From positions 682,001 through 746,000 of the forward strand of contig NZ_JMCB01000001.1 in the NCBI RefSeq assembly GCF_000737315.1: DNA of 64,000 nt, written 5' to 3'. Position numbers and translations under genes: made by a program. Source of the stretch: Hyalangium minutum (lineage in GTDB: Bacteria; Myxococcota; Myxococcia; Myxococcales; Myxococcaceae). Below the pieces are notes generated by a model, which did not search any database, had not been told where the DNA came from, and saw nothing but the letters and a program-made list of their open reading frames with translations. Below are positions 5,781 to 60,391 of the stretch, one piece after another (the stretch's first letter is position 1; each line of letters opens with the position of its first letter).

Positions 5781-5925
5781 AAAGGCGCGCGGCGTATAGC
5801 CGGGCTCTTCCCTTCTGGCAACCCCCTAACCTTGAAAGCCCGGGGATTCCTGGCAGCCGAAAGTATTACGGCCAATGTGTACGGCCGTTCCTTGCCAAGG
5901 AGGGTTCGGCCCTTACGTTGTGACT

Positions 5926-8577
<2,652 letters not shown>

Positions 8578-8603: not shown

Positions 8604-8643
8604 GAGCGCCCCACCCCGCATGCCGGGATGGGGCGCTCTTTTT
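8604..8643 (+). terminator. Intrinsic terminator between convergent clpB and argR
   Basis: GAGCGCCCCA...TGGGGCGCTC stem followed by TTTTT. Confidence 0.75.
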
Positions 8644-9061
8644 ATGCGAGCCGCAGCAGCTGCTCGACCTGCTCCCGCACCTCGAGCAGCAGCTCCGGAT
8701 CCTTCACGGCGATGAAGATCGTGTCATCCCCCGCCACCGTGCCCGCCAGCCCGGGGATGGCCGCGGATCGATCCACCATCAGCGCCACCGCCTGCGCGTA
8801 GCCCGGCGATGTCTTCAGCACGAGCAGGTTCGGCGGCGCCTCGATCACAGTGATCGCCTGCGTGGGCGCGGCCGGCCCCGGCTCCACCCGCTGGTAGCGC
8901 CCGCCCACCTTCTGGATCGACAGCCGCTTCAGGTGCCGCGAGAGCGTGGACTGGCTCGGCGCGTGGCCCTCGGCCGCCAACAACCGCTGGAGCACCGCCT
9001 GATCGGTGATCTCGTTCGCCTCCAGCAACCTCACGATGGCCTCATCCAGCTGAAGATCCAC
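8642..9061 (-). CDS. argR: Arginine repressor (likely GTG start at 9061; ORF extends to 9088)
   Basis: QSTLSRHLKRL winged helix-turn-helix, LKTSPGYAQAVA, AGTVAGDDTIFI arginine-binding motif. GGAGG lies 7 nt upstream of GTG 9061. Confidence 0.92.
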   Translation of the reverse strand: MDLQLDEAIVRLLEANEITDQAVLQRLLAAEGHAPSQSTLSRHLKRLSIQKVGGRYQRVEPGPAAPTQAITVIEAPPNLLVLKTSPGYAQAVALMVDRSAAIPGLAGTVAGDDTIFIAVKDPELLLEVREQVEQLLRLA

Positions 9062-9077
9062 GCCCATCCCTCCACCA

Positions 9078-9101
9078 TGCATTTTCATGCATATGCATGC
9101 A
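9078..9101. promoter_or_regulatory. Two overlapping ARG-box-like palindromes upstream of argR
   Basis: TGCATTTTCATGCA (9078-9091) and TGCATATGCATGCA (9088-9101), both TGCAT-N4-ATGCA, matching the TGMAT-N4-ATKCA core. Confidence 0.65.
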
Positions 9102-9175
9102 AGTACCCTTTGGGGAACCGATCAGAATCCCCGCGAAAAATCGCGACAAAATAGGGTATTGCGCTGCGCGTTGAA

Positions 9176-9231
9176 CTGAATATTATGCGCAACTCCTTCG
9201 GTCCAATGCAGCGTTTATGCACGACTATGCA
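9176..9231. promoter_or_regulatory. Phased array of ARG-box-like sites upstream of argF'
   Basis: ATGC(A/G) half-sites at 9185, 9206 and 9227 (exact 21-bp period); best full box TGCACGACTATGCA at 9218-9231. Confidence 0.55.
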
Positions 9232-9273: not shown

Positions 9274-10278
9274 ATGAGGCATCTCACCCGCATCCAGGAT
9301 CTGGGCCCCGAAGGCGTCGAGAAGATCCTCGCGCAGGCTGCGGCCTGGAAGCGCCAGGCCCCCGGCCCCATCTTCCAGAACCGCCTGCTGGGGATGGTGT
9401 TCTTCAACCCCTCGCTGCGCACGCGCACCTCGTTCGAGGCGGTGATGCTGCGCTCGGGTGGGCACGCCATCGTGCTGGATGTGGGCAACGGCGTGTGGAA
9501 GCTGGAGGACCGGGTGGGCGCGGTGATGAACGCGGACCGGGCCGAGCACATCAAGGAGGCGGCGCCGGTGCTGTCGCGCTTCGCGGACATGCTCGGGGTG
9601 CGCGCGTTCTCGCAGGGCGGCGGCGACGAGGAGGATGAGCAGGACTCGGTCATCAACTCCTTCCGCAAGCACGTCACCGTGCCGCTGGTGAGCATGGAGT
9701 CCGCGCGCGAGCACCCGTGCCAGGGCCTGGCGGACGCGCTGACGCTCCGGGAGAACTTCGGCTCCACCAAGAAGCTGCCGGTGACGCTCACGTGGGCGCC
9801 CCACATCAAGCCGCTGCCCAAGGCGGTGCCGAACTCGTTCCTGCTGACGGCGGCGGCCGCGGGCTGCGAGGTGCGCGTGGCCCACCCGCCGGGCTTCGAG
9901 CTGCATCCGAAGGTGCGCGCCGAGGCCGAGGCCTACGCAAAGGCCACCGGCGGCAGCGTCACGTACACCCACGATCAAGAGGAGGCGCTGGAGGGCAGCC
10001 GCGCCGTCTATGCCAAGGCCTGGGGCCCGGCCACTCGCGCGGGGCACGCCCCGGGGGATGTGGCGGCGCTGCTGGCGTCGTACTCGGGGTGGATGCCCAC
10101 CCGGCGCTCCATGTCCCTGGCCGCCAAGGACGCCATCTTCCTCCACTGCCTGCCGGTGAGGCGCAACGTCGAAGTGTCCGATGAGGTGTTGGATCACCCC
10201 TCCAGCCGTGTTGTGGATACGGCGGAGAACCGCTTCCACGTCCAGCGCTCCATTCTTCAGTGGATCCTGTCTACCTGA
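9274..10278 (+). CDS. argF': N-acyl-ornithine carbamoyltransferase (ArgF' family), predicted N-succinyl-preferring
   Basis: FFNPSLRTRTSF, WKLE, DRAEH, HPCQ, TLTWAPHIKPLP, HCLPVRRNVE and AENR are ArgF'-type, not classical OTCase. ATG at 9274. Confidence 0.88.
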   Translation: MRHLTRIQDLGPEGVEKILAQAAAWKRQAPGPIFQNRLLGMVFFNPSLRTRTSFEAVMLRSGGHAIVLDVGNGVWKLEDRVGAVMNADRAEHIKEAAPVLSRFADMLGVRAFSQGGGDEEDEQDSVINSFRKHVTVPLVSMESAREHPCQGLADALTLRENFGSTKKLPVTLTWAPHIKPLPKAVPNSFLLTAAAAGCEVRVAHPPGFELHPKVRAEAEAYAKATGGSVTYTHDQEEALEGSRAVYAKAWGPATRAGHAPGDVAALLASYSGWMPTRRSMSLAAKDAIFLHCLPVRRNVEVSDEVLDHPSSRVVDTAENRFHVQRSILQWILST

Positions 10279-10296
10279 CCCCCTTCGAGGTCTGCC

Positions 10297-11139
10297 TTGC
10301 CCTTCTCTCCCGATCCCTATGCCGCGCTTCGCAACGCCGCGCGCTACGTCCGGCAGTTCCGCCGGAAGACCTTCGTCCTCCTGGTCGACGGCCCGATGCT
10401 CGGGGATGCCCGGCTGCGGCGCGCGGTCTGCGAGCAGATCGCCCTGCTGTGGACCTTCTCCATCCAGCCCGTGGTGGTGCACGGCGCCGGCCCCGAGCTG
10501 AACACGCCCTTTGACGCCATGTCCGCCAAGGTCCGCATGGACCTGCTGGCCGACCTGCAGACAGCGGGTGTGCCGTGCGTGGGCCTGAGCGGCGTGGACG
10601 CGGGTCTGCTCAAGGCCCGGCGGCGCAACGGGGAGCCGGGCTCCGAGTCCTCCTGGGAGTCGAACAAGCCGAACAACTACAGCCTCGTGGGCGACATCGA
10701 GTCCGTGGACACGCGGCTGCTCCAGCACCTGCGCACCGGGGACTACGTTCCGGTGGTGGCGCCGCTGGCGGGTGATCCGTCTGGCACCGTGTACAACGCC
10801 AGCGCCGACACCGTGGCCGCCACGCTCGCGGTGGCCCTCGGCGCCGAGAAGCTCTTCTTCCTGCTGCCCACCCCGGGGCTCCTGCGCAAGCCGGAGGATC
10901 CCGCTTCGCTCGTGCCGCAGGCCACGCTCACGGACCTTGCCGCGCTGGAGCAGGAGGGCCAGATGTCCGACAGCACGGTCTCCAAGGTGCACGCCATCCG
11001 GTCCGCGCTGGTGGGCGGGGTGACGAGCGTCCACCTGGTGAGCGGCATGCTCCCGAACGCCATCCTCGAGGAGGTCTTCACCAACGAGGGCAGCGGCACC
11101 ATGGTGCTGCGCGAGGCTCCGGCTCGGGGTAACGGATGA
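10297..11139 (+). CDS. argB: Acetylglutamate kinase homolog with degenerate catalytic motifs (probable pseudokinase)
   Basis: AAK fold by overall similarity (YVRQFRRKTFV, VVVHG, LSGVDAG, VPVVAP, AEKL, EEVFTNEGSGT). K-x-GG is replaced by LVDG, the substrate loop is deleted and GGM is replaced by DST. Confidence 0.8.
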   Translation: MPFSPDPYAALRNAARYVRQFRRKTFVLLVDGPMLGDARLRRAVCEQIALLWTFSIQPVVVHGAGPELNTPFDAMSAKVRMDLLADLQTAGVPCVGLSGVDAGLLKARRRNGEPGSESSWESNKPNNYSLVGDIESVDTRLLQHLRTGDYVPVVAPLAGDPSGTVYNASADTVAATLAVALGAEKLFFLLPTPGLLRKPEDPASLVPQATLTDLAALEQEGQMSDSTVSKVHAIRSALVGGVTSVHLVSGMLPNAILEEVFTNEGSGTMVLREAPARGNG

Positions 11140-12203
11140 CGCCGTCCGCCCTGCTCGAGGCCTTGGTGGCCACCCCGAGCGTCTCCGGACAAGAGGGACG
11201 CATCGCTGATCAGGTGTCCACCTGGGCTGAGGGTTGGGGTGCGCGCGTGCAGCGCCAGGGCCACAACGTGTGGTTCTCGGTGGGCAGCGGGCCTCGGCGC
11301 CTGCTCGTCAACTCGCACCTGGACACGGTCCCCCCGTGCGCCGGGTGGACGCTGGAGCCGCAGGTGCCAGTGTGGCGCGAGGGCAAGCTGTACGGGCTGG
11401 GCAGCAATGACGCGAAGGGCTGTGTCACCGCCATGCTGCTGGCGGCCCGCGGCCTGCTGGAGAACCCGAGCGCCCTGGAGGGCCGGGGCGAGGTGGTGTT
11501 CGCCTTCACCGCCGAGGAGGAGACCGGCGGCAAGGGGCTGGGCACGGTGCTGTCCACGTTCGGGCCTCTGGACGCGGCCGTGGTGGGTGAGCCCACCAGC
11601 CTGAAGCCCTGCACCGCCCAGCGCGGGATGCTCCTGCTGAAGTGCGTGGCGCATGGGCGCTCGGCGCACGTGGCCCACGCGCAGACCGCGGACGCTCAGA
11701 ACGCCATCCACCTGGCCGCCCAGGACATCTCCACCCTGGCCGAGCTGCGCTTCCCGCCGCACCCGCTGCTGGGCGAGGCGCGGGCGCAAGTGACTCAGAT
11801 CCAGGGCGGGCTGGCGCGCAACCAGGTACCGGACCGCTGCGAGTTCTTCGTCGACATCCGCACCACGCCGGGCATGGAGCACTCGGCGGTGGCCACCCAC
11901 CTCGGGGGCGTGCTGCGCAGCGAGGTGGTGGTGCACTCCGCGCGCTACCTGCCGAAGGCCACTGCCTCCACCGAGCCCATCGTCCGCGCGGCCGTGGCGG
12001 CGTCGGGCGCCGGGCCGGTGGGCTCGAGCACCGCGTCGGACTGGGCCTTCCTGGGCAACCTGCCCGCGGTGAAGGTGGGCCCCGGCGACACCCTGCGCTC
12101 GCACAAGCCGGACGAGTACCTCGCCCTCACGGAGCTGGAGGCCGGTGTGGCCTTCTACCAGCAGCTCATCCGCGGCTACTTCCAGGAGGTGGCCCATGGC
12201 TAA
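11136..12203 (+). CDS. argE: M20 family acetylornithine/N-acylcitrulline deacylase
   Basis: NSHLDTV, GSNDAKG, AEEETGG, GEPT and HKPDEY metal ligands intact; position within the arg operon. Confidence 0.85.
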   Translation: MTPSALLEALVATPSVSGQEGRIADQVSTWAEGWGARVQRQGHNVWFSVGSGPRRLLVNSHLDTVPPCAGWTLEPQVPVWREGKLYGLGSNDAKGCVTAMLLAARGLLENPSALEGRGEVVFAFTAEEETGGKGLGTVLSTFGPLDAAVVGEPTSLKPCTAQRGMLLLKCVAHGRSAHVAHAQTADAQNAIHLAAQDISTLAELRFPPHPLLGEARAQVTQIQGGLARNQVPDRCEFFVDIRTTPGMEHSAVATHLGGVLRSEVVVHSARYLPKATASTEPIVRAAVAASGAGPVGSSTASDWAFLGNLPAVKVGPGDTLRSHKPDEYLALTELEAGVAFYQQLIRGYFQEVAHG

Positions 12204-13548
12204 CGACATGCTCTGGGCCAAGGGCCTTCCGCTGGATGCAGCGATCCACCGCTTCACCGTGGGAGACGATCCCTGGGTGGACCTCGCCCTGGCGCCGCAC
12301 GATGCGCTCGGCAGCGCGGCCCATGCGCGCATGCTCGCCCGCGTGGGGCTGCTGCCCGAGGCGGACATGAAGGCCCTCGTGGGTGCGCTGCACGCACTCC
12401 ACGACGAGGCGCGCGCGGGAGCGTTCACCATCCGTCCGGAGCAGGAGGACGGCCACACCGCCCTGGAGGCGGCGCTCGTGGAGCGCGTGGGCGAGCCGGG
12501 CCGGCGCATCCACCTGGGGCGCTCGCGCAATGATCAGGTCCAGCTGGCCCTGCGGCTCATGCTGCGCGAGGAGGTGCTGAAGCTCGGCGCCCAGGCGGTG
12601 GAGCTGGCCGGGGCCTTCCTGGACTTCGCGCAGGCGAACGCCACCGTGCCGATGCCCGGCTACACGCACATGCGGCGCGCCATGCCGAGCACCTTCGGCC
12701 TGTGGGGCGCCGCCTTCGCCGAAGGTCTGCTCGAGGAGCTGGAGGCGCTGCGCGGCCTGTGGGCGCGGCTGGATCGCTGCCCCCTGGGCGCGGCGGCGGG
12801 CTTCGGCGTGCCGCTGCCCATCGATCGCGAGTACGTGGCCAGCCTGCTCGGCTTCTCGCGCGTGCAGCGCAGCCCCATCGACGTGCAGAACAGCCGCGGG
12901 CGGCACGAGACGGCCACGCTCACCTGGGCGTGCTCCGTGGCGGGCGGCCTGGAGAAGTGGCTGTGGGACGTGGCGCTCTTCAGCACCGAGGAGTTCGGCT
13001 TCCTCGCGCTGCCGGATGCCTTCACCACCGGCTCGTCCATCATGCCGCAGAAGAAGAACCCGGACGTGGTGGAGCTGGCCCGCGCCCGCTGCCGGGAGCT
13101 GCGGGGTCTCGCCAAGCAGGTGGAGGAGATTGCTGGAGGCCTGCCCTCGAGCTACCACCGCGACTTCCAGCTGCTGAAGCGCCCCACCCTCACCGCGCTG
13201 GGCTCGTTCCGCGAGCTGCTGGACGTGCTCACCCGCCTGGTGCCCGTGCTGAAGATCCGCGCCGAGGCCGCCGCCCGCGCCAGTGACGACACGCTGTACG
13301 CGGCCCACCACGCCTACGTGCTCGTCGGCAAGGGCCTGCCCTTCCGGGATGCGTACCGCGAGGTGGCCCACCAGATCAGCGACGGGAATTTCCACCCGGA
13401 TCGCGCCGCGCTGACGGCCACCCACCTGGGCGGCGCCGGCAACCTGGCCCTGGAGCAGATCCGAGCCGAGCTGTCCACCAGCCGCTCCTGGCTCACCGAG
13501 ATCCATCGCACGCTCGCCGAATGCGCAGGGCGTGTTTGGCAGTTGTAG
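12196..13548 (+). CDS. argH: Argininosuccinate lyase
   Basis: GRSRNDQV, MPGYTH, GSSIMPQKKNPD signature; ATG 12196 with GGAGG upstream. Confidence 0.95.
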   Translation: MANDMLWAKGLPLDAAIHRFTVGDDPWVDLALAPHDALGSAAHARMLARVGLLPEADMKALVGALHALHDEARAGAFTIRPEQEDGHTALEAALVERVGEPGRRIHLGRSRNDQVQLALRLMLREEVLKLGAQAVELAGAFLDFAQANATVPMPGYTHMRRAMPSTFGLWGAAFAEGLLEELEALRGLWARLDRCPLGAAAGFGVPLPIDREYVASLLGFSRVQRSPIDVQNSRGRHETATLTWACSVAGGLEKWLWDVALFSTEEFGFLALPDAFTTGSSIMPQKKNPDVVELARARCRELRGLAKQVEEIAGGLPSSYHRDFQLLKRPTLTALGSFRELLDVLTRLVPVLKIRAEAAARASDDTLYAAHHAYVLVGKGLPFRDAYREVAHQISDGNFHPDRAALTATHLGGAGNLALEQIRAELSTSRSWLTEIHRTLAECAGRVWQL

Positions 13549-13589
13549 GCAGTACTTCCGCAGTTGCAGCAGTGAGGACCTCGAAGAAC

Positions 13590-14780
13590 ATGAACAAGAA
13601 ACACGTGGTGCTGGCCTTCTCCGGCGGTTTGGACACCTCTTTCTGCGTGGTCTATCTGCGCGAGCAGGGCCACACGGTCACCACCGTCACCGTGGACACC
13701 GGCGGCTTCAGCGCGGACGCGCTGGCGCGCATGCCGGAGCACGCCGCCCGCCTGGGCGCGGTGGCGCACCACACCATCGACGCGCGCTCGCTGCTCTTCG
13801 AGGACTACCTGCGCCACCTGCTCGCCGGCAATGTGCTGCGCGGCCAGGCCTACCCCCTGAGCGTCTCCGCCGAGCGCGTCTGCCAGGCCACCGAAGCGGT
13901 CCGCATGGCCCGCCAGGTGGGCGCTCAGGCCCTGGCCCACGGCTCCACCGGCGCGGGCAATGATCAGGTCCGCTTCGACGTGGCCTTCCGCGCCCTGGCC
14001 CCGGACCTGGAGCTCATCACCCCGATCCGCGAGCTGAGCCTCAGCCGCGCCCAGGAGATGTCCTTCCTGGCCGAGCGCGGCATCCACCTCCCGGCGAAGA
14101 CGGGCGCCTATTCGGTGAACGAGGGCATGTGGGGCACCTCCGTCGGCGGCAAGGAGACGCACGACTCCTGGAGCACCCTGCCCGAGGCCGCCTACCCCGC
14201 GGGCGTCATCCCGGCCGATCTCAAGCCGCGCACGCTGGTGCTCAGCTTCGAGAAGGGCCGCCCGGTGGCCCTCGACGGCAAGGCGATGGATCCCGTGGCG
14301 CTGATCGCCGAGCTGAACGCGGTGGGCCAGCCCTACGGCGTGGGCCGTGGCGTGCACCTGGGTGACACCATCCTGGGCATCAAGGGCCGCGTGGGCTTCG
14401 ACGCTCCCGCGGCCATCATGCTCATCACCGCGCACCGCGAGCTGGAGAAGCTGGTGCTGTCCGGCAAGCAGCTCTTCTGGAAGGAGACGCTGGGCAACCT
14501 CTACGGCTCGCTGCTGCACGAGGGGCACTTCTTCGATCCGCTCGCGCGCGACTTGGAGGGGTTCCTGACGTCCTCGCAGGCGCAGGTGACGGGCGAGGTG
14601 CGGCTGACGCTGCAGCCGCGCGCCCTCGTGGTGGAGGGCGTGCGCTCGAAGCACTCGTTGATGGACGCGAAGGTGGCCAGCTACGGCGAGGCGAACCACT
14701 TGTGGACCGGCGCGGAAGCCGCGGGCTTCGCGAAGGTGTACGGCGTTGCTCAGACCCTGGCCCTGAAGGTGAAGTCATGA
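13590..14780 (+). CDS. argG: Argininosuccinate synthase
   Basis: LAFSGGLDTS PP-loop, HGSTGAGNDQVRF, ILGIKGR; ATG 13590. Confidence 0.95.
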   Translation: MNKKHVVLAFSGGLDTSFCVVYLREQGHTVTTVTVDTGGFSADALARMPEHAARLGAVAHHTIDARSLLFEDYLRHLLAGNVLRGQAYPLSVSAERVCQATEAVRMARQVGAQALAHGSTGAGNDQVRFDVAFRALAPDLELITPIRELSLSRAQEMSFLAERGIHLPAKTGAYSVNEGMWGTSVGGKETHDSWSTLPEAAYPAGVIPADLKPRTLVLSFEKGRPVALDGKAMDPVALIAELNAVGQPYGVGRGVHLGDTILGIKGRVGFDAPAAIMLITAHRELEKLVLSGKQLFWKETLGNLYGSLLHEGHFFDPLARDLEGFLTSSQAQVTGEVRLTLQPRALVVEGVRSKHSLMDAKVASYGEANHLWTGAEAAGFAKVYGVAQTLALKVKS

Positions 14781-15835
14781 AAGTCCACATCGATAAGATT
14801 GGCAGTGTCACCCGGAACCTGCGGCTGGGCCGGACCGTCCACCTCACCTCGGACATCCAGGCGGTGGAGGGCGCGGTGATCGCCGCGCGCATCCACGGGG
14901 AGAAGTCCACCTACAACCAGCTCGAGGACGTCCACGGCCGCATGGTGACGCTGCACGGCGGTGACATCGTCGTCGGCGCGCTGGGCCACCGCAACGCGCT
15001 GCACGGCTACGAGGGCGTGGTGCCGGAGAAGGTGGTGGCGGGCCAGAAGCTCCACATCCTGAACATGGGCGGCGTGATTGGCCAGTGCACCTCGCACAAC
15101 CCGGGGGTGGGCACGCCCTTCGAGGCCGAGGTGCTGGGCCAGGTGCTCATGTTCCCCGAGTTCCAGTCGCGCGCCGGTCAGCCGGCCCACGTCCGGGCCG
15201 GGGCGCTCAAGGGCTCGTCGCAGCCGGTGAAGGTGCCGGTGGTGTACGTGGTGGGCACCTGCATGAACGCGGGCAAGACGTACGCCGCGTGCGCCATCGT
15301 GCGCCAGCTGCATCAGGCCGGCTACCGCGTGGGCGGCGCCAAGCTCACCGGCGTGTCGCTGATGCGCGACACGCTGAGCATGCGGGACTCGGGCGCGGAG
15401 GTGGTGATGGACTTCACCGACGCGGGCACCGTGTGCACCAGCCCGAAGACGGCGGCGCAGGTGTCGCGCGTCATCCTCTCCGAGCTGGCCGCCGCGGACG
15501 TGGACGTCGTCGTCGCGGAGACGGGCGATGGCATCATGGGCGAGTACGGCGTGCAGTCCATCCTCGAGGACTCGGCGCTGCGCGAGCTGGGCGCCGCCTG
15601 GGTGCTGTGCGCGAATGATCCCGTGGGAGCCGCCGGTGGCGTGCGCCACATGAAGGAGACCTACGGCATCCAGGTGGATGTGGTGGCCGGGCCCGCTACG
15701 GACAACCGGGTGGGCATCCGCTTCGTGGAGCGTGAAGTGGGGCTGCCCGCCCACAACGCCCGTGCGGACGCCGCCGGCCTGGGCGGACTCATCGTCGAGA
15801 AGGTTGCACCGCGTATCGCGGGGAGGAAGAGCTGA
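14777..15835 (+). CDS. DUF1611-like P-loop protein, candidate N-acyltransferase replacing ArgA
   Basis: ATG 14777 overlaps the argG stop (ATGA). GTCMNAGKT P-loop-like motif, KLTG, MDFTDAG and ETGDG match the DUF1611 long subfamily as I recall it. Confidence 0.7.
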   Translation: MKVHIDKIGSVTRNLRLGRTVHLTSDIQAVEGAVIAARIHGEKSTYNQLEDVHGRMVTLHGGDIVVGALGHRNALHGYEGVVPEKVVAGQKLHILNMGGVIGQCTSHNPGVGTPFEAEVLGQVLMFPEFQSRAGQPAHVRAGALKGSSQPVKVPVVYVVGTCMNAGKTYAACAIVRQLHQAGYRVGGAKLTGVSLMRDTLSMRDSGAEVVMDFTDAGTVCTSPKTAAQVSRVILSELAAADVDVVVAETGDGIMGEYGVQSILEDSALRELGAAWVLCANDPVGAAGGVRHMKETYGIQVDVVAGPATDNRVGIRFVEREVGLPAHNARADAAGLGGLIVEKVAPRIAGRKS

Positions 15836-16905
15836 TGAACAAGGTGCACGCATACATCCTGGGTGCCGCCGGTTTCCCCGGTGGCGACCTGCTGCGGCTG
15901 CTGTCGGGACACCCGGCGGTGGCGGCGGTGCGCGCGGTGTCCCAGCCCCACGGGGACATGCCCTTCTACAAGGTGCACCCGCACCTGCGCGGGCTCGTCG
16001 AGGGCAAGTTCGACGCGGCGCCGGACTGGCGCTGGCTCACGGACTCTCCGCAGCCGGTGGTCTTCTCCGCGCTGGAGGAGGAGGAGCTCGCCCGGCAGCT
16101 GCCCGCCCTGGAGAAGCAGTGGGCGGAGCTGGGGCTCTCGGAGCGGCTCATCCTGGTGGACCTGTCCCCGGACTTCCGGCTGGACCACCCCGGGCGCTAC
16201 GCCGCCACGCATGGCCGCCCTCACCCGTCTCCGGATCTACTGGAGAAGTTCGTGTACGGCCTGCCCGAGTGGCGCCGCGACAAGCTGAAGGGCGCCAAGC
16301 GCATCGCCAACCCGGGGTGCTTCGCCACGGCCGTGCAGCTCGCGCTGCTGCCGGTGGCGTCCACGCCGGGGCTGGGGATGATCGCCGCCTCGGCGGTGAC
16401 GGGCTCCTCGGGCTCGGGCGCGCTGCCGGGCGAGGTGACGCACCACCCCACCCGCGCGCATGACTTCCGCGCCTACAAGCCGCTGGAGCACCCGCAGGAG
16501 GCGGAGATCGACGTGATGCTCGTGGCGCACAAGGCCGTGCGCCACCGGCTCACCTTCGTGCCGCACTCGGCGCCGCTGGTGCGCGGCATCTTCGCCACCA
16601 TCCAGTTCGAGTGGCCGGAGAACGGTGGCGGTGTGAGCACGAACTCGCTGACCGAGGTGTACCGCCGCTACTACGCCACCTCGCCCATGGTGCGCGTGGT
16701 GGAGGGCACGCCGCGGCTGGCCTCGGTGGTGGGCAGCAACTTCGCTGATATCTCCGTGGCCACGCGTGGGCGCACGGTGGCCGTCATGGTGGCGCTCGAC
16801 AACCTGGTGAAGGGACTGGCCGGACAAGCCGTGCAGTCCCTCAACGTGGCGCTCGGCCTGCCCGAGGACACCGCCCTGCGCCAGGCCGCGTGCTTCCCCT
16901 GCTGA
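15835..16905 (+). CDS. argC: N-acetyl-gamma-glutamyl-phosphate reductase homolog with degenerate nucleotide-binding motifs
   Basis: IANPGCF catalytic Cys, DLSxDFRL, TGSSGSG and LDNLVKG present. Rossmann loop reads GAAGFPGGD, ALPHG reads ALEEE, H-x-H reads HPQ. Confidence 0.82.
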   Translation: MNKVHAYILGAAGFPGGDLLRLLSGHPAVAAVRAVSQPHGDMPFYKVHPHLRGLVEGKFDAAPDWRWLTDSPQPVVFSALEEEELARQLPALEKQWAELGLSERLILVDLSPDFRLDHPGRYAATHGRPHPSPDLLEKFVYGLPEWRRDKLKGAKRIANPGCFATAVQLALLPVASTPGLGMIAASAVTGSSGSGALPGEVTHHPTRAHDFRAYKPLEHPQEAEIDVMLVAHKAVRHRLTFVPHSAPLVRGIFATIQFEWPENGGGVSTNSLTEVYRRYYATSPMVRVVEGTPRLASVVGSNFADISVATRGRTVAVMVALDNLVKGLAGQAVQSLNVALGLPEDTALRQAACFPC

Positions 16906-21629: not shown

Positions 21630-22672
21630 CCCAGCAGTCCCAGGAAGCACTCTTTCGACGGGCGGCGCTTGGCGGGCCGGTCCGGCACGCCTCCCGTGTT
21701 GCGGTCGCGATCCACCGCATCCAGCGCCTCACCGGCGGGAGTGTCCGGCTCCTGGTAGTCGTCCTCCTCGCCGCGGTAGCTCATGAAGAAGCCGCTCTCA
21801 TCAATAGGGCTGTAGCCCACGAAGACGCGCGCGAAGTCCGACGCATCCCGCCCCGCCGAGCGGTCGTTGTTGTCGAACACCTTCCTCACCCCGTAGTAGT
21901 AGGCCGGGTTCTCGCCGCACGGCACATCCGGCTGCTCGGGCCGCAGGGGGCACTGGCCGCTCACGTCCGTGTCGGCGAAGGCGAAGTCTCCCAGGAGGAT
22001 GGCATAGCGGCCCTTGCACTCGCCGTTGATGGCCCGCCCCGAAGCGCACGCCTTCATGTCCCGCAGCACCGCGTGCTGCTCCTTGAAGAAGCCCGAGTCC
22101 CCCTCCAGGAAGGTGGTGGTCAGCGAGGGCAGCGTCTGCAGGCGTGCGTTCGCGGTGCACGACACGCCGCCCACGTTCTCGTAGACGCCATCGAGCACGC
22201 TGTCCGTGGCATTCCCCAAGTCCGGGGTGGTATCCCCCTGGTTCCAGTCGCCCTGCTGAGGCACCATCAAAATGGGGCGCAGGCTGCGGGGCACGTCGAA
22301 CTCCACCCGGTCGTCCACCTCGCACTGCACCTCCAGGCTGTCGATGCGCGTGAAGACGTGGGTGATGCTCGAGCTGTTGTTGCTGGAGCGGCGCCCGTCA
22401 AAGTCGCGGTAGCGAGCGTTGGCATCGCGCGTCACGGCCGGAGCAATGTTGGGGAACATGGAGAAGTCCCCAATCTTGTCCTCGTTGGGCATCATCTTGT
22501 GCACCCGGAGGGCGGTGGCGTCCCACAGCGGGGAGACAGCCGCCTCATGCACGCGCAGGGACAGGTAGCCCACCTCGGCGAAGTGGATGCCGAACGCCAC
22601 CACGGTGACGAAGATCATGAGGCCCAGCACCATCTCCGCCATGGCCTGGCCGCGCCGCCTCGAGGCTCGCAT
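21623..22672 (-). CDS. TadE-like minor pilin
   Basis: ATG 22672 (TGATG overlap); RGQ-AMAEMVLGLMIFV prepilin motif with E+5. Confidence 0.75.
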   Translation of the reverse strand: MRASRRRGQAMAEMVLGLMIFVTVVAFGIHFAEVGYLSLRVHEAAVSPLWDATALRVHKMMPNEDKIGDFSMFPNIAPAVTRDANARYRDFDGRRSSNNSSSITHVFTRIDSLEVQCEVDDRVEFDVPRSLRPILMVPQQGDWNQGDTTPDLGNATDSVLDGVYENVGGVSCTANARLQTLPSLTTTFLEGDSGFFKEQHAVLRDMKACASGRAINGECKGRYAILLGDFAFADTDVSGQCPLRPEQPDVPCGENPAYYYGVRKVFDNNDRSAGRDASDFARVFVGYSPIDESGFFMSYRGEEDDYQEPDTPAGEALDAVDRDRNTGGVPDRPAKRRPSKECFLGLLGC

Positions 22673-24159
22673 CAGTGCACCCCCTTGTAGCCGGCGCGGA
22701 CGAGCTCGCTGAAGGCCTCGGCCGCCACCCCGCCCACCGTGTTGGGCACGTCCGTTCCGCCGCGCAACAGCTTGCCGCCGATGTCCGCGTCCGCGGGGAC
22801 CAGGGTGGCGCGCCAGAACGGGTTCCACAGGTTGGGCGGCTCGTCCCAGTGGCCGCGCCGGTGGTAGTAGGCCAGCCCGGTGGCCAGCGCCTGCTGCACG
22901 CTGATGTCCGTGCCGTTCGCCAGGTGCCAGCCATGGTTGTCGAACTCGCTGGCCTTGCCCGGCGTGAAGCTGAAGGTGAACTGCAGGTACCAGGGCTCGG
23001 ATCGCAGCCCCCGCTGCTTGTAGTCCCGCTGCACGAGCGCGAAGAGCTTGGGCTGCGCCCAGAGGTTGTTCGCCGTATCGTCCGCGGTGTTGTACGTGAA
23101 GCCGCCGAAGAAGGTGGACGGCTGGTCCTCGGGCCTCACGTACATCAGCGTGTGCCGGAACTGTTTCTCCATGCCAGGATCCGCCACGCCAAGCATCGGG
23201 CCTCCGGGCGTCCACCAGTGGTCGTCGGAGTTGTCCAGCTTGTCCGTGGACTTCACGCCCGCGGTGGCATTCACGACGAAGGGCGCACAGCCCGGGAAGG
23301 TGATCTCCACCTCGGCGTGATCCTCGGCCCAGGTGTAGTGGGGCAGGTCCGCGCGCCCCCCGTGCCCCAGCTTGTCGCCCCAGTAGGCACTGCCTCCCTG
23401 GTTGATGACGCGCAGCCGGGCGCCTGCGGTGGTCAGCCGGCCGAGCACCCCGCCGTCGCCGCCGGTGAACGCGGGCATCCCCTGGCGGCGGGTGATGAAC
23501 TCGTAGCCTCGGGTGGCCATGGCCATGTCCAGGGAGAAGTCCTCGCCTCCCGCGATGGCATGGTTCAGCTCCGCGAGCGACACCGCCGTGGGGCCCGCGT
23601 GCAGCTCGTTCGGCCAGGCGCTGCCCTCGGAGGCCAGCTTCGCGTACTGCTGGGCGAAGGACTTCGGCCCGCCTGACACCGACTCCTGGAGCTGCTCGAC
23701 GAACTTGCCCTGCAGGTAGGCCATGTAATAGCCCAGCACCTGGATGTTGTAGGCCTGCACACCCGCCAGCGCGTCGTGCTTGTTCCACTTCTCCTGGATC
23801 TCCGCATTCAGCTCGTCCAGCGGCTGGAGGACGGCGGCGGCGGCCTGGCAGTTGTTGGCGGCCATGCGAGCGGCATTGAGGTTGGCGCGCGTGACGCTGG
23901 TCCAGCTGATGAGGCTCTGCACACCCGACATGGCCACCAGGTGGGCCGTCTGGGCGCGCCGCATGAGGGCGATGCTGTTGAAGGTGCGCGCGGTGGCCAC
24001 CGCGTTGCTGTAGGCGGCCAGGTCCGCCACGCTCTGGGCCTCCAGCTTCTCGCGCACCTTCATGGAGAACGCGAGCGTCAGGGTCACCATCAACGTGAGG
24101 AACAGCAGCGTCAGGCTGAAGAGCACCAGCGTCTGGCCGCGAGGACTGGACCGGCTCAC
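22672..24159 (-). CDS. TadG-like (Tad domain) pilus tip protein
   Basis: RGQ-TLVLFSLTLL...KLEAQSVADLAAYSNAVATAR, the typical Tad N-terminal domain. Confidence 0.78.
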   Translation of the reverse strand: MSRSSPRGQTLVLFSLTLLFLTLMVTLTLAFSMKVREKLEAQSVADLAAYSNAVATARTFNSIALMRRAQTAHLVAMSGVQSLISWTSVTRANLNAARMAANNCQAAAAVLQPLDELNAEIQEKWNKHDALAGVQAYNIQVLGYYMAYLQGKFVEQLQESVSGGPKSFAQQYAKLASEGSAWPNELHAGPTAVSLAELNHAIAGGEDFSLDMAMATRGYEFITRRQGMPAFTGGDGGVLGRLTTAGARLRVINQGGSAYWGDKLGHGGRADLPHYTWAEDHAEVEITFPGCAPFVVNATAGVKSTDKLDNSDDHWWTPGGPMLGVADPGMEKQFRHTLMYVRPEDQPSTFFGGFTYNTADDTANNLWAQPKLFALVQRDYKQRGLRSEPWYLQFTFSFTPGKASEFDNHGWHLANGTDISVQQALATGLAYYHRRGHWDEPPNLWNPFWRATLVPADADIGGKLLRGGTDVPNTVGGVAAEAFSELVRAGYKGVH

Positions 24160-24914
24160 AGCGCCTCCGGGGTGGGGGGGCAGTTCTGGGTCACGAAGTA
24201 CTGGGGCCGTGGCGGCGTCATCATCCGCATCACGTGCGTGGCCTGGAGCGGGAAGACGTACTCCCTGCGGTTCACGCGCGAGAGCAGCTCCTGCTGGATA
24301 GCAGCCCCCAGCGGGATGGCGTTCCGTCCCCGCGTCCAGGCAGCGGTGCGGACGGGCTGGAGCGGATCGGCCCCGGTGTAGTTCCGCAGCCCCATGTGCG
24401 CGAGGAACATCCGGGTCAGCACCCAGTCAGCGAAGGGAACGCGCAGCGGGTACCAGAAGACGATCCGCGCCTCCAGGCGCACCACGTCCTGGATGGACTG
24501 GTAGCGCGCCGGGTCATCGAAGTCCTCTTCCTCGGTGGGGGAGATGTCGCCGAGCAGCGGGCTCGAGCGCGCCACCCAGACGATGTCGCCGCTGAAGCCC
24601 ATGTCCAGGTGGGGCTTGTACTGGTCCTCCTTGTGCTCGCGGAAGGCGGCCCCGAGCGCGGCCGGGGAGTCCGTCCGGGCGAAGGAGGGCAACAAGGTGG
24701 CGATGGCGGCGTGGGTCATCGCCTCGCAGTCGCCGTGCTTGACCACGCCGGTGCGGACTGCGTGGAAGGCGGCGTACTCGGTGAGGATGCGGGCCTGGAG
24801 GAGCAGGAAGAGCTGGAACGTGCCAAGGATGAGGAACACGGTCAGAGGCAGCGTGATCGCTGCTTCCACCGCAGCTTGACCAGACTGCATGTCTGCAGGG
24901 TCACTCCACCTCAT
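24156..24914 (-). CDS. TadE family minor pilin (start may be ATG 24890)
   Basis: SGQ-AAVEAAITLPLTVFLILG...YAAFHAVRTG TadE signature. Confidence 0.82.
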   Translation of the reverse strand: MRWSDPADMQSGQAAVEAAITLPLTVFLILGTFQLFLLLQARILTEYAAFHAVRTGVVKHGDCEAMTHAAIATLLPSFARTDSPAALGAAFREHKEDQYKPHLDMGFSGDIVWVARSSPLLGDISPTEEEDFDDPARYQSIQDVVRLEARIVFWYPLRVPFADWVLTRMFLAHMGLRNYTGADPLQPVRTAAWTRGRNAIPLGAAIQQELLSRVNRREYVFPLQATHVMRMMTPPRPQYFVTQNCPPTPEAL

Positions 24915-25129
24915 GGGAGCGCACTTCGCCCATCCAGTCTTTCGGCGCTATCGGACAAGTGGCCTCCTGTCAGCTGCTCTCGATTTTTCCTATATAAACA
25001 GAGAGTTCATACCTATCAGGTTCATCCTGCAAGCGGTTTCAAGACCTACTCCAGCCCACCTCTGGCGGCAGTCCGCATGCGTCACCGGGGCATCCGCCCC
25101 GGGGGATGGCAGGCCCTGAGGCCCCTCTC

Positions 25130-30195: not shown

Positions 30196-30283
30196 GCGCG
30201 CCCTCTCTTAGCATGCCCGGAAGGTAGCGTCCCCGCCGTTGCGCGGGCGATGATGGCGCCGGCTCCCGGCCGCGCCCGTCCGC

Positions 30284-31678
30284 ATGCTCTTCAACACCGC
30301 CCTGTTCTGGCTGTTCTTCGCTGTCTTCTTCGTGGCGTTTCACTTCGCCGCGAGGACGCGCGTGGCGAAGCTGTGGCTCGTGGTGGTGGGCAGCCTGCTC
30401 TTCTACGGCGCGTGGGACCTGCGCTGCGTGCCGCTGCTGCTGGGCACCGCGCTGCTGGACTTCTGGATCGCCCTGCGCCTGTCGCGCTCCCAGGACGAGC
30501 GGAAGCGCCGCGTGCTGCTGGCCACGAGCATCGTCGCGAACCTGGGAGTGCTGGGCTTCTTCAAGTACGCGCGCTTCTTCGCGGACTCGGCACACGGGCT
30601 GCTCGGGGCGCTGGGGGTGGCGCTGCCGGAGCCCACGTTCTCGCTCCTGCTCCCGGCGGGCATCTCCTTCTATACGTTCCAGAGCATGAGCTACACCATC
30701 GACGTCTACCGCCGGGAGCTGCCCGCACGCGAGCGCCCCGAGGAGTTCCTGGCGGCGGTGTCGTTCTTCCCGCACCTCGTGGCGGGCCCCATCATCCGCG
30801 CCTCCGTGCTGCTGCCGCAGTTCGAGCAGATGCAGGCGCCTCGCTGGGAGCAGGTGCGGCGCGGGTACCTCCTCATCGCGGTGGGACTGCTGAAGAAGAC
30901 GGTGGCGGATCTGCTCGCGGGGCCCGCGGATGCGCTCTTCCACGGGTCGGGCGCCACGAGCGCGCTGGAGGCCTGGACAGGGGCGCTGGCGTTCACCGGG
31001 CAGATCTACGGGGACTTCTCCGGGTACACGGACATCGCCATCGGCGTGGCGCTGCTGCTGGGCTTCGTGCTGCCGCCCAACTTCGATCTGCCGTACCTGG
31101 CCACCTCGCCCATCGACTTCTGGCGCCGCTGGCACCTGTCACTGTCCACGTGGCTGAGGGACTACCTCTACATCCCGCTCGGAGGAAACCGAGGGCACCG
31201 CTACCGCAACCTGATGCTGACCATGCTGCTGGGCGGGCTGTGGCACGGGGCCAACTGGACCTTTGTCCTCTGGGGCCTGTACCACGGGCTGCTGCTCGTG
31301 GTGGCGCACCAGCTGGTGGATCGCTTCCCCGGGCTGAAGCAGACGCCCTCGGCGGCGGTGCTCTGGGCGAAGCGGCTGGGGACGCTGTACCTCGTGGTGC
31401 TCGGCTGGGTGCTGTTCCGCGCGGAGAGCCTGCCTGAAGCGCTCCGGGTGCTGCAGGGCATGCACATGCCCACCCTGGCCTCCAGCTTCACCTGGCCCGC
31501 CGTGCTTACCCTGCTCTTCGTGGTGGCGGGGCTCGTGCTGTGCCATGCGGCCTCGGCGCTCGCGGAGAAGACAGAGCTGCGCCAGCGCCCCATCCTGTGG
31601 CCCGTGGTGACCGCGTGTTTCGCCGTGGCCATGGTCATCGGGACGCAGGGCCACAGCTTCATCTACTTCCAGTTCTGA
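30284..31678 (+). CDS. MBOAT family O-acyltransferase (AlgI/DltB-like)
   Basis: LGFFKY, PAGISFYTFQSMSY, FFPHLVAGPI, DFSGYTDIA, FWRRWHLSLSTWLRDYLYIPLGG, GLWHGA. Confidence 0.93.
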   Translation: MLFNTALFWLFFAVFFVAFHFAARTRVAKLWLVVVGSLLFYGAWDLRCVPLLLGTALLDFWIALRLSRSQDERKRRVLLATSIVANLGVLGFFKYARFFADSAHGLLGALGVALPEPTFSLLLPAGISFYTFQSMSYTIDVYRRELPARERPEEFLAAVSFFPHLVAGPIIRASVLLPQFEQMQAPRWEQVRRGYLLIAVGLLKKTVADLLAGPADALFHGSGATSALEAWTGALAFTGQIYGDFSGYTDIAIGVALLLGFVLPPNFDLPYLATSPIDFWRRWHLSLSTWLRDYLYIPLGGNRGHRYRNLMLTMLLGGLWHGANWTFVLWGLYHGLLLVVAHQLVDRFPGLKQTPSAAVLWAKRLGTLYLVVLGWVLFRAESLPEALRVLQGMHMPTLASSFTWPAVLTLLFVVAGLVLCHAASALAEKTELRQRPILWPVVTACFAVAMVIGTQGHSFIYFQF

Positions 31679-31685
31679 GCCGCCC

Positions 31686-32918: not shown

Positions 32919-32952
32919 TCTCCCGCCCCCGAGGGCGGGTATACTGGGAGTG

Positions 32953-34203: not shown

Positions 34204-34209
34204 CCCTCT

Positions 34210-44070: not shown

Positions 44071-44113
44071 GGGGACAGCGCGGAACCTTACTCTGTATGT
44101 TCACGGCCAACCA

Positions 44114-45088: not shown

Positions 45089-45098
45089 AGCGAGCCGC

Positions 45099-59218: not shown

Positions 59219-60391
<1,173 letters not shown>

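What the first reader, a model, noticed from the sequence alone, without database searches (positions are those of the whole stretch)
9274..16905. Rewired arginine operon: intact late enzymes, crippled ArgB and ArgC, and a DUF1611 protein where argA is missing
Seen: seven co-oriented genes, four junctions overlapping (argF'-argB*-argE-argH-argG-DUF1611-argC*), divergent from argR. ArgF', ArgE, ArgG and ArgH keep their catalytic motifs. Both glutamate-to-ornithine enzymes present (ArgB, ArgC) carry several in-frame active-site substitutions yet remain open reading frames with no frameshift. No argA, argJ or argD is in the window. Inference, two models. (a) The operon only converts scavenged ornithine (plausible for a predator) via N-acyl-ornithine and N-acyl-citrulline to arginine, with DUF1611 acylating ornithine. 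(b) The dead AAK protein is an arginine-sensing subunit for the DUF1611 acyltransferase, forming a split, non-GNAT N-acylglutamate synthase. Simple early decay is the null model.
Basis: partly seen in the sequence, partly recalled or inferred. Interest (0 to 1): 0.85.

Follow-up and report, generated by a model that had tools for sequence, protein, structure and literature searches.

The report
Arginine operon with conserved dead ArgB, ArgC
This soil myxobacterium (Hyalangium) carries a widespread arginine-synthesis operon in which two enzymes, ArgB and ArgC, have lost key catalytic residues but are still kept by natural selection, so they are probably retained non-catalytic proteins rather than decaying genes, and how the cell makes arginine is open.

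Summary
Seven co-oriented genes (argF'-argB*-argE-argH-argG-X-argC*) lie divergent from argR, four junctions overlap, and the window has no argA, argJ or argD.

Three points change the picture.

1. The operon and its "DUF1611" gene X are not a local rewiring. The same gene order occurs in Holophagaceae, Gammaproteobacteria, Chthoniobacterales and Myxococcus/Corallococcus. X was already predicted to be a non-GNAT N-succinylglutamate synthase (GapMind 2026 preprint). ArgF' has Ala at the E92 specificity position, which points to N-succinyl intermediates.

2. The crippled ArgB and ArgC are confined to one clade (Hyalangium, a Stigmatella sp. and related MAGs). All 8-10 loci of that clade share the losses and none of about 60-70 other loci do.
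   - ArgB: Lys to Leu, GG to DG, a roughly 25-residue deletion of the GRRxT substrate lid, and loss of GGMxPK.
   - ArgC: both invariant His residues are lost, and Cys is kept.

3. Plain decay is refuted. Within the clade dN/dS is 0.27 (ArgB*) and 0.21 (ArgC*) against 0.19-0.23 for the neighbours, with no frameshift anywhere.

ArgB* keeps the N-helix and the arginine-site motif. X, ArgF', ArgE and ArgH are unchanged at invariant sites.

Best reading: these are conserved pseudoenzymes, with ArgB* probably an arginine-binding partner. I could not test whether intact paralogues exist elsewhere in the genome.

The parts
8642..9088 (-). argR, arginine repressor, divergent from the operon
   Evidence: Pfam Arg_repressor and Arg_repressor_C. 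The same divergent position is seen in the Holophaga, Myxococcus, Corallococcus and Stigmatella loci.
9078..9231 (.). argR/argF' intergenic control region with TGCAT-N4-ATGCA-like palindromes (9078-9101, 9179-9193, 9216-9231); putative ARG boxes
   Evidence: Repeat scan. Their function is inferred only. No sigma-70 consensus was found.
9274..10278 (+). argF', N-acylornithine carbamoyltransferase, predicted to prefer N-succinylornithine
   Evidence: NCBIfam NF003384, 440 bits. Best PDB relatives are Xanthomonas AOTCase and Bacteroides SOTCase. Ala sits at the E92 position. 0 of 161 invariant columns are changed in this clade.
10297..11139 (+). argB*, AAK-fold orthologue of N-acylglutamate kinase that lacks the catalytic Lys, the Gly loops and the substrate lid; a conserved pseudokinase
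   Evidence: 24 of 101 invariant columns changed; dN/dS 0.27; AF2 pLDDT 81; low confidence only at 66-71 and 113-127; TM about 0.8 to hexameric NAGKs.
11136..12203 (+). argE-like M20 deacylase (N-acylcitrulline hydrolase)
   Evidence: Pfam Peptidase_M20 and M20_dimer. 0 of 135 invariant columns changed.
12196..13548 (+). argH, argininosuccinate lyase
   Evidence: TIGR00838 scores 291, above its cut-off of 279.5. 0 of 167 invariant columns changed.
13590..14780 (+). argG, argininosuccinate synthase
   Evidence: TIGR00032 scores 314, above its cut-off of 268. 5 of 206 invariant columns changed, all conservative.
14777..15835 (+). X, a two-domain protein: all-beta N-domain plus a BioD/SIMIBI-type P-loop domain (GTCMNAGKT). 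It is the predicted non-GNAT N-succinylglutamate synthase.
   Evidence: >6000 homologues, 65-70% identical across phyla; always between argG and argC; 1 of 159 invariant columns changed. The prediction is in preprint 10.1101/2024.10.14.618325.
15835..16905 (+). [quoted passage not shown] It keeps the Cys motif but has lost both invariant His residues (H82 to E, H221 to Q).
   Evidence: 8 of 118 invariant columns changed; dN/dS 0.21.

Best explanation
The region is a member of a widespread arginine operon type, argR<>argF'-argB-argE-argH-argG-X-argC, which most likely runs through N-succinylated intermediates. In this operon type X, a P-loop protein unrelated to GNATs, supplies the missing N-acylglutamate synthase step. 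That role is predicted, not assayed.

On the stem of the Hyalangium/Stigmatella clade, the resident ArgB and ArgC orthologues lost residues needed for catalysis.
- ArgB lost the ATP gamma-phosphate Lys, the glycine loops and the whole N-acylglutamate lid.
- ArgC lost both active-site histidines.

Since then both have been held under purifying selection as folded proteins. They are therefore conserved pseudoenzymes, or strongly altered enzymes, and not pseudogenes.

What is shown: the losses, their phylogenetic restriction, the selection, and the unchanged state of X, ArgF', ArgE, ArgG and ArgH.

What is inferred:
- ArgB* survives as an arginine-binding, oligomer-forming regulatory or scaffold partner of the pathway, most plausibly of X. 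This would parallel the dead kinase domain of classical ArgA and the yeast NAGS-NAGK metabolon.
- ArgC* is kept for a similar structural role, or for a changed one.
- The kinase and reductase chemistry that X's product still needs is provided by genes outside the window.
For: 1. Same gene order in Holophaga, Chthoniobacterales, Myxococcus, Corallococcus, Stigmatella and 80 further genomes.
2. ArgB and ArgC motifs are intact in all 60-70 loci outside the clade and degenerate in all 8-10 loci of the clade.
3. Share of columns invariant elsewhere that are changed in the clade: argB 24/101 and argC 8/118, against argF 0/161, argE 0/135, argH 0/167, X 1/159 and argG 5/206.
4. The clade is monophyletic and sister to Myxococcus/Corallococcus in a tree built from the four intact proteins, so a single event suffices.
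5. Faster divergence from outgroups for ArgB only (55.6% against 64.4% identity to Acidobacteria) and mildly for ArgC.
6. Within-clade median dN/dS by NG86 is 0.27 for argB* and 0.21 for argC*, against 0.19-0.23 for the other genes. YN00 gives about 0.03-0.04 for both. Intact Myxococcus-group argB and argC give 0.22 and 0.15.
7. About 50 ArgB* clusters of 270-284 aa, at 90% identity, come from genomes and metagenomes.
8. Variability inside ArgB* is concentrated at residues 61-80, 111-130 and 221-230, the catalytic and substrate loops. The N-helix, the core and EEVFTNEGSGTMV are near-invariant. That motif is the published arginine-site motif E-(L/I)-(F/M)-(T/S)-x-x-G-x-G-T (PMC4490483).
9. The catalytic residues of E. 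coli NAGK are K8, K217, D162 and G11/45/184/213 (PMC3329491).
10. The AF2 model keeps the AAK fold and best matches hexameric arginine- or PII-regulated NAGKs and the NgNAGS AAK domain.
11. The prediction that X is an alternative ArgA, and the residue-92 rule for ArgF', come from preprint 10.1101/2024.10.14.618325. Ala is at that position here.
Against: - No biochemical data exist for any of these proteins.
- I could not search the rest of any Hyalangium or Stigmatella genome, so the intact kinase and reductase that this reading requires are hypothetical.
- If they do not exist, X's unchanged sequence is hard to reconcile with dead downstream enzymes.
- ArgC* keeps its Cys motif and a GxxGxxG motif and still passes the TIGR01850 cut-off, so it may retain some redox activity.
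- The residues that suggest arginine binding in ArgB* are also conserved in the intact orthologues. Their retention does not prove a sensor role.
- The identification of the second His of HxH as the ArgC general base rests on my recollection of the M. tuberculosis ArgC and T. thermophilus LysY literature. The paper I could read names only His217 and Tyr211 as stabilising the acyl-enzyme.
Confidence: 0.55

Rival explanations
1. Ornithine-salvage operon. The clade no longer makes N-acylornithine from glutamate. X, or another transferase, succinylates ornithine that is scavenged or made through ProBA and ornithine aminotransferase. ArgF', ArgE, ArgG and ArgH then finish arginine.
For: All late enzymes and X are intact and under selection while ArgB and ArgC are catalytically damaged. 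The organism is a predator with access to amino acids. No argD lies in the operon of either the Myxococcus group or this clade.
Against: X is unchanged at 158 of 159 positions that are invariant in lineages where it must act on glutamate. A switch of substrate from an acidic to a basic side chain would be expected to leave a mark. This model also gives no reason for purifying selection on ArgB* and ArgC*.
Confidence: 0.15
2. ArgB* and ArgC* are still the pathway's kinase and reductase, using compensating residues or substrate handed over directly by X.
For: Purifying selection is as strong as on the neighbouring enzymes. X's product needs these two steps. ArgC* keeps Cys, the TGSSGSG segment and the first His, and passes the TIGR01850 cut-off. 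D171 and K230 of ArgB* (E. coli D162 and K217) are kept.
Against: ArgB* lacks the Lys8 equivalent, has Asp in the GG loop, and lacks the whole 25-residue lid with the GRRxT segment. Its GGMxPK loop varies freely among clade members, which is the signature of an abandoned site. It fails every NCBIfam kinase cut-off. NCBI itself names several of these proteins only 'amino acid kinase family protein'.
Confidence: 0.1
3. Neofunctionalisation. ArgC* (Cys kept, His changed to Gln and His to Glu/Asp) and ArgB* now do different chemistry, for example a non-phosphorylating aldehyde or thioester reaction that no longer needs an acyl phosphate. This would explain the joint loss of the kinase and of the phosphate-handling histidines.
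For: Both proteins were modified together on the same branch. Acidic residues replace His at position 82 in all clade members. The Cys motif is strictly conserved.
Against: This is purely inferential. No new conserved motif appears in ArgB*. Its changed segments are variable or predicted disordered rather than newly constrained.
Confidence: 0.1
4. Plain early decay of two redundant genes.
For: Loss of invariant catalytic residues, in-frame deletions, and a further 16-residue deletion in the Stigmatella copy.
Against: There is no frameshift or stop in 8-10 genomes or in about 50 metagenomic clusters. dN/dS is 0.2-0.27 by NG86 and about 0.03 by YN00, the same as for the intact neighbours. Start/stop overlaps are preserved.
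Confidence: 0.03

Closest known systems
Arginine operons with the predicted alternative N-succinylglutamate synthase (Steroidobacter denitrificans ACG33_RS14135 family; GapMind 2026 preprint 10.1101/2024.10.14.618325)
   Same: Same gene set around a hypothetical P-loop protein (argB, argC, argF', argG, argH, argR, sometimes argE). ArgF' carries A or P, rarely Q, at position 92. The gammaproteobacterial loci lack argE. X is 65-70% identical across these phyla.
   Different: In the window's clade the adjacent ArgB and ArgC have lost catalytic residues. The preprint does not mention this. I did not align X with ACG33_RS14135 itself.
AAK domain of classical N-acetylglutamate synthase (ArgA; N. gonorrhoeae and P. 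aeruginosa NAGS)
   Same: It is an acetylglutamate-kinase-derived domain that no longer acts as a kinase. It nucleates a hexamer and binds arginine through the N-helix and the E-x-F-T-x-x-G-x-G-T loop to regulate an acyltransferase (PMC4490483). The ArgB* model matches the NgNAGS AAK domain with TM 0.76.
   Different: ArgB* is a stand-alone protein, not fused to a GNAT domain. It is the orthologue of an active kinase, not an old paralogue. Its partner, if any, would be a P-loop protein.
Yeast NAGS-NAGK metabolon
   Same: NAGS exists only in complex with NAGK, so a kinase-fold protein is needed for synthase function and arginine control (PMC3329491). This offers a rationale for keeping ArgB* after its catalysis was lost.
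   Different: Yeast NAGK is catalytically active. No complex has been shown here.
N-acetyl/N-succinyl-ornithine carbamoyltransferase pathways of Xanthomonas and Bacteroides
   Same: ArgF' is 244 bits to Xanthomonas AOTCase and 212 bits to the Bacteroides enzyme. The route is linear, with an ArgE-type deacylase acting after carbamoylation.
   Different: Xanthomonas uses a bifunctional AAK-GNAT NAGS/K (PMC1865377). This operon has X instead.
DgcN / DUF1611 (D-glutamate N-acetyltransferase, PDB 7XRJ)
   Same: Weak sub-threshold match of the P-loop region to Pfam DUF1611_C in 34 of 44 family members. The preprint reports a remote Foldseek match to 7XRJ.
   Different: The match is below Pfam's threshold and there is no DUF1611_N match. 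My Foldseek search ranked SRP GTPases and dethiobiotin synthetase first, and 7XRJ was not in the top 50. The N-terminal domain is all-beta.
HisZ-type regulatory pseudoenzymes (from my own knowledge; not tested here)
   Same: A catalytically dead relative of an enzyme is retained in a biosynthetic operon as a regulatory subunit.
   Different: HisZ is an ancient paralogue of an unrelated pathway's enzyme. Here the pathway's own orthologues have lost catalysis in situ.

Membership tests
N-acetylglutamate kinase (ArgB, TIGR00761) | Family HMM score above the curated cut-off | tested here: not met
   126 bits against a cut-off of 151.3. No NCBIfam kinase model passes.
N-acetylglutamate kinase (ArgB, TIGR00761) | Amino acid kinase fold | tested here: met
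   Pfam AA_kinase, 88 bits. AF2 model pLDDT 81 and TM about 0.8 to NAGK structures.
N-acetylglutamate kinase (ArgB, TIGR00761) | Catalytic Lys8 and Gly11 of the N-terminal KxGG motif (E. coli numbering, PMC3329491) | tested here: not met
   VVKxGG is changed to LLVDG in all clade members and is intact in all others.
N-acetylglutamate kinase (ArgB, TIGR00761) | N-acylglutamate-binding lid segment (GxRVT) | tested here: not met
   About 25 residues (KVAGRRxTS...AAKM) are deleted in frame.
N-acetylglutamate kinase (ArgB, TIGR00761) | C-lobe catalytic residues Asp162, Gly213 and Lys217 | tested here: inconclusive
   D171 and K230 are kept. The GGM glycine and methionine are lost and the loop varies among clade members.
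Arginine-sensitive AAK module (NAGK / NAGS AAK domain) | N-terminal helix plus the E-(L/I)-(F/M)-(T/S)-x-x-G-x-G-T loop and the beta-sheet Lys | tested here: met
   PYAALRNAARYVRQF helix, AEK185, and E259-V-F-T-N-E-G-S-G-T are invariant in the clade. Arginine binding itself was not testable.
N-acetyl-gamma-glutamyl-phosphate reductase (ArgC, TIGR01850) | Family HMM cut-off and the Cys active-site motif | tested here: met
   285.5 bits against a cut-off of 233.6. IANPGCFATAVQLALLP is present and invariant.
N-acetyl-gamma-glutamyl-phosphate reductase (ArgC, TIGR01850) | Invariant active-site histidines (His of LPHG; second His of HxH) | tested here: not met
   H82 is changed to E/D and H221 to Q in all 10 clade sequences. 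Both are His in all 69 others and in the PDB ArgC/LysY chains.
DUF1611 / DgcN N-acetyltransferase family | Pfam PF07755 above its gathering score, with the DUF1611 N-terminal domain | tested here: not met
   23.1 bits against 25, covering profile positions 4-49 only. There is no N-domain match.
DUF1611 / DgcN N-acetyltransferase family | Structural similarity to 7XRJ beyond a generic P-loop fold | tested here: inconclusive
   Foldseek top hits are SRP GTPases and dethiobiotin synthetase at E about 1e-6. 7XRJ is not among the 50 listed.
Predicted alternative N-succinylglutamate synthase (ACG33_RS14135 family) | Conserved position inside arginine operons next to argB, argC, argF', argG and argH | tested here: met
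   X lies between argG and argC in every locus examined.
Predicted alternative N-succinylglutamate synthase (ACG33_RS14135 family) | Absence of any other ArgA or ArgJ in the same genome; N-succinyltransferase activity | not testable with these tools
   Only the 64-kb window and flanks of up to 10 kb could be read. No argA, argJ or GNAT lies in the window.
N-succinylornithine carbamoyltransferase subtype of ArgF' | A, P, S or V instead of Glu at Xanthomonas AOTCase position 92 | tested here: met
   Ala90 of the window protein aligns with E92 (compare the E92A, E92S and wild-type chains). The residue is A in the clade and the Myxococcus group, and P in the Gammaproteobacteria.
Conserved pseudoenzyme | Loss of catalytic residues together with purifying selection and intact ORFs across species | tested here: met

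The most novel reading that the evidence does not exclude
Hyalangium and Stigmatella have no functional N-acylglutamate kinase or reductase at all. They reach N-succinylornithine by an undescribed route, for example X or a partner succinylating ornithine or glutamate semialdehyde made by the proline enzymes. ArgB* and ArgC* would then act as arginine-responsive regulatory subunits of a non-GNAT, P-loop N-succinyltransferase. That would be an independent re-invention of the 'dead kinase domain controls the synthase' design of classical ArgA.
Probability: 0.15. Interest if true: 0.8.

Novelty: new variant of a known kind. Interest (0 to 1): 0.55.

Why it matters
The operon type and the idea that X replaces ArgA are already in the literature as a prediction. 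The new element is a natural experiment: one clade has kept X and every late enzyme unchanged, has stripped the catalytic residues from the ArgB and ArgC orthologues, and still keeps both under selection.

- If intact paralogues exist elsewhere, this is a clean bacterial case of biosynthetic enzymes turning into conserved pseudoenzymes in situ. It would also be a living analogue of how the regulatory kinase domain of ArgA arose.
- If no paralogues exist, either X is not simply an N-acylglutamate synthase, or there is an unknown route to N-acylornithine.

Either outcome constrains the still-untested function of a protein family with thousands of members across several phyla. It also matters for automated annotation and auxotrophy prediction, which currently label these proteins acetylglutamate kinase and ArgC.

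Tried and rejected
- Sequence search of X and of its family profile against PDB found only the dethiobiotin synthetase P-loop, at E about 0.01-0.02. It gave no direct link to DgcN.
- Foldseek of the X model did not return 7XRJ among the top 50. I therefore do not treat the acyltransferase assignment as structurally supported here.
- The M. xanthus argE paper (PMC107734) is not held.
- Supplements of the GapMind 2026 and Ramoneda 2023 papers hold nothing on Myxococcus, Hyalangium or Stigmatella.
- Literature searches for Hyalangium or Stigmatella arginine auxotrophy found nothing relevant. A myxobacterial consortium preprint lists no arginine auxotrophy for Archangium or Cystobacter but does not cover Hyalangium.
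- I could not search the rest of any clade genome for argB, argC, argJ, argA, argD, astA or OTC paralogues. The ArgB* protein search lists hits down to about 50% identity and shows no second, intact copy of the same ArgB subfamily under a Hyalangium name. Distant canonical paralogues are not excluded.
- I considered that the ArgB* deletion could be an assembly artefact. I rejected this because it recurs in independent assemblies.
- I considered that a different codon usage could mark X as foreign. I rejected this because its GC3 is 0.93, like its neighbours.

Full report
**What is in the window.** The window is high-GC DNA (about 68% G+C). It matches contig JMCB01000001.1 of assembly GCA_000737315.1, and the nearest named relatives are Hyalangium species.

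On the + strand between 9274 and 16905 lie seven genes, with argR divergent at 8642-9088:
- an N-acylornithine carbamoyltransferase (argF');
- an amino-acid-kinase protein (argB*);
- an M20 deacylase (argE-like);
- argH;
- argG;
- a 352-residue protein I call X;
- an argC homologue (argC*).

Four junctions overlap: ATGA at B/E and G/X, 8 nt at E/H and 1 nt at X/C. A Pfam scan of about 46 candidate ORFs across the 64 kb found no aminotransferase class III, ArgJ or GNAT protein.

**The damage to ArgB and ArgC.** I compared ArgB* with solved NAGK structures and with orthologues from the same operon type. ArgB* has:
- Leu for the N-terminal catalytic Lys;
- Asp in the GG loop;
- HGAG for HGGG;
- an in-frame deletion of about 25 residues that removes the KVAGRRxTS...AAKM segment, which contains the GxRVT substrate-binding lid;
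- NASAD for NTNAD;
- a scrambled GGMxPK loop.

The equivalents of E. coli D162 and K217 remain. The catalytic roles of K8, K217, D162 and G11/45/184/213 are stated in PMC3329491. ArgB* fails every NCBIfam kinase cut-off.

ArgC* passes the TIGR01850 cut-off and keeps the Cys motif IANPGCFATAVQLALLP. However, the His of the LPHG motif is Glu, and the HxH motif reads HPQ. As I recall the M. tuberculosis ArgC and T. thermophilus LysY literature, the second His is the general base. The PDB numbering (C148, H209) agrees with that recollection. The one paper I could read names only His217 and Tyr211.

**The operon is a widespread type, and X is not a local novelty.** X has more than 6000 homologues. 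They are 65-70% identical in Holophagaceae/Geothrix, gammaproteobacterial MAGs and Chthoniobacterales, and 76-80% identical in Myxococcus, Corallococcus and Pyxidicoccus. In every locus read, X sits between argG and argC in the same operon. Acidobacteria often have argD in front, and the Gammaproteobacteria lack argE.

A 2026 preprint (10.1101/2024.10.14.618325, Appendix 2) describes this situation for Steroidobacter ACG33_RS14135 and predicts the protein to be an alternative N-succinylglutamate synthase. Its arguments are:
- conserved operon context;
- mutual exclusion with ArgA;
- a remote Foldseek match to the D-glutamate acetyltransferase DgcN (7XRJ);
- A/P/S/V at ArgF' position 92.

The window's ArgF' has Ala at that position. 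This can be seen directly by comparing the E92A, E92S and wild-type Xanthomonas chains. The other loci have A, P or, rarely, Q, which matches the preprint's description.

My own tests of X:
- The AF2 model is good (pLDDT 92). It has an all-beta N-domain and a BioD/SIMIBI-type P-loop domain with GTCMNAGKT.
- Foldseek hits are led by SRP GTPases and dethiobiotin synthetase, with 7XRJ not in the top 50.
- The match to Pfam DUF1611_C is sub-threshold and restricted to the P-loop.

So "DUF1611" is a loose label. The acyltransferase chemistry (CoA-dependent, or ATP-dependent as in BioD) is not settled. Operon logic makes X the best candidate for the missing first step.

**The damage is confined to one clade.** In an alignment of 60-80 orthologous operons, all Myxococcus, Corallococcus, Pyxidicoccus, acidobacterial, gammaproteobacterial and verrucomicrobial ArgB and ArgC proteins keep every motif. 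All 8-10 loci of the Hyalangium/Stigmatella sp./related-MAG clade share the losses.

The table gives, for each gene, the columns that are at least 97% invariant outside the clade and how many of them are changed in at least 80% of clade members.

| Gene | Changed / invariant columns |
|---|---|
| argB | 24/101 |
| argC | 8/118 |
| argF' | 0/161 |
| argE | 0/135 |
| argH | 0/167 |
| X | 1/159 |
| argG | 5/206 (conservative) |

A neighbour-joining tree of the four intact proteins shows the clade as monophyletic and sister to the Myxococcus group, so one event on its stem is enough. Divergence from the outgroups is accelerated for ArgB (55.6% against 64.4% identity to Acidobacteria), is mildly accelerated for ArgC, and is not accelerated for the other genes.

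M. xanthus has the intact version. It is reported to be auxotrophic only for branched-chain amino acids and to use a linear ArgE pathway.

**Not decay.** Every clade locus has full-length argB* and argC* ORFs with preserved start/stop overlaps. About 50 further ArgB* clusters of 270-284 residues come from genomes and metagenomes.

| Comparison | dN/dS |
|---|---|
| Clade argB*, median NG86 | 0.27 |
| Clade argC*, median NG86 | 0.21 |
| Other five genes in the clade, median NG86 | 0.19-0.23 |
| Clade argB* and argC*, YN00 | about 0.03-0.04 |
| Myxococcus-group intact argB, NG86 | 0.22 |
| Myxococcus-group intact argC, NG86 | 0.15 |

Constraint is at most about two-fold weaker than on the active orthologues.

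**What is still constrained.** In ArgB*, variability within the clade is concentrated at residues 61-80 (the glycine loop and deletion junction), 111-130 and 221-230 (the former GGMxPK). The AF2 model is uncertain at the first two of these (residues 66-71 and 113-127); at 221-230 confidence only dips to about 76. The Stigmatella copy has lost a further 16 residues in one of these loops.

The N-terminal helix, the core and the C-terminal EEVFTNEGSGTMV stretch are nearly invariant. That stretch matches the arginine-site motif E-(L/I)-(F/M)-(T/S)-x-x-G-x-G-T of arginine-sensitive NAGKs and of NAGS AAK domains. In those proteins the AAK module nucleates the oligomer and transmits arginine inhibition to the acyltransferase (PMC4490483). 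The model's best structural matches are hexameric, arginine- or PII-regulated NAGKs (TM about 0.8) and the N. gonorrhoeae NAGS AAK domain (TM 0.76).

In ArgC*, the Cys motif and most of the protein are strongly conserved. The glycine-rich N-terminal motif and the former LPHG site vary.

**Interpretation.** The most economical reading is that ArgB* and ArgC* are conserved pseudoenzymes, or at least strongly altered enzymes. ArgB* is very unlikely to phosphorylate N-acylglutamate. It has kept the parts that other systems use to bind arginine and build a regulatory oligomer.

This reading leaves a gap. X is unchanged, so it presumably still makes N-succinylglutamate, which needs a kinase and a reductase. 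I could not examine the rest of any clade genome. The ArgB* protein search shows no second copy of the same ArgB subfamily under a Hyalangium name. Distant canonical paralogues are not excluded.

Close relatives such as Cystobacter and Archangium do not appear among the X or ArgB* homologues and are not predicted to be arginine auxotrophs. A different arginine gene set therefore exists in the neighbourhood of this clade. Non-orthologous replacement of ArgC by ProA is known from laboratory evolution (PMC6941894).

The alternatives are listed with their tests in the rival explanations:
- ornithine salvage with a promiscuous X;
- residual canonical activity;
- new chemistry that no longer uses an acyl phosphate.

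**Verdict.** Simple decay is refuted. The "DUF1611 in place of argA" element is a previously predicted, widespread feature. The clade-specific, selectively maintained inactivation of ArgB and ArgC appears to be unreported: I found no paper on it. That is the part worth following up. A whole-genome paralogue search is the cheap, decisive next step.

Noticed in passing
window 41179-44100 (-), 52703-55519 (+), 55438-57765 (+): Three large (775-973 aa) proteins each carry a spermidine/spermine-synthase-like domain in the C-terminal half. One also matches MFS_1. All three lie within 17 kb.
   Followed up: no
L036 (BNCN01000006.1, titled 'Comamonas sp. KCTC 72670'): This record carries a Myxococcus-type operon. 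X is 78% identical to the window's, and the locus clusters with M. xanthus-like loci in the tree. The assembly is probably mislabelled or contaminated.
   Followed up: partly
L062, L063, L071, L075 (gammaproteobacterial MAGs): The operon lacks the M20 argE gene between argB and argH. The GapMind preprint notes the same for Steroidobacter. The N-acylcitrulline hydrolase of these organisms is unknown.
   Followed up: no
window 9078-9101, 9179-9193, 9216-9231: TGCAT-N4-ATGCA-like palindromes lie in the argR/argF' intergenic region, one of them overlapping the argR start. They are likely ArgR operators.
   Followed up: partly
L007:5567-6376 (Stigmatella sp. ncwal1): Its ArgB* has an extra 16-residue in-frame deletion in the loop that corresponds to window ArgB* residues 111-126. 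This shows continued erosion of the former substrate loops.
   Followed up: partly
(protein searches): No Cystobacter, Archangium or Melittangium proteins appear among the closest homologues of X or ArgB*, although these genera are close relatives of Hyalangium. They may lack this operon entirely.
   Followed up: no
window 22672-24947 (-), 5875-8577 (+), 43997-46541 (+), 59219-62936 (-): Other content of the window: Tad/TadE-like pilus genes, ClpB, a histidine kinase with a sigma-54 activator, and a FadB/FadA-like beta-oxidation pair.
   Followed up: no
window 30254-37946 (+): An MBOAT acyltransferase is followed by four large ORFs, three with no Pfam match and the last ending in a YfhO-like segment. 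This may be a surface-polymer modification cluster.
   Followed up: no
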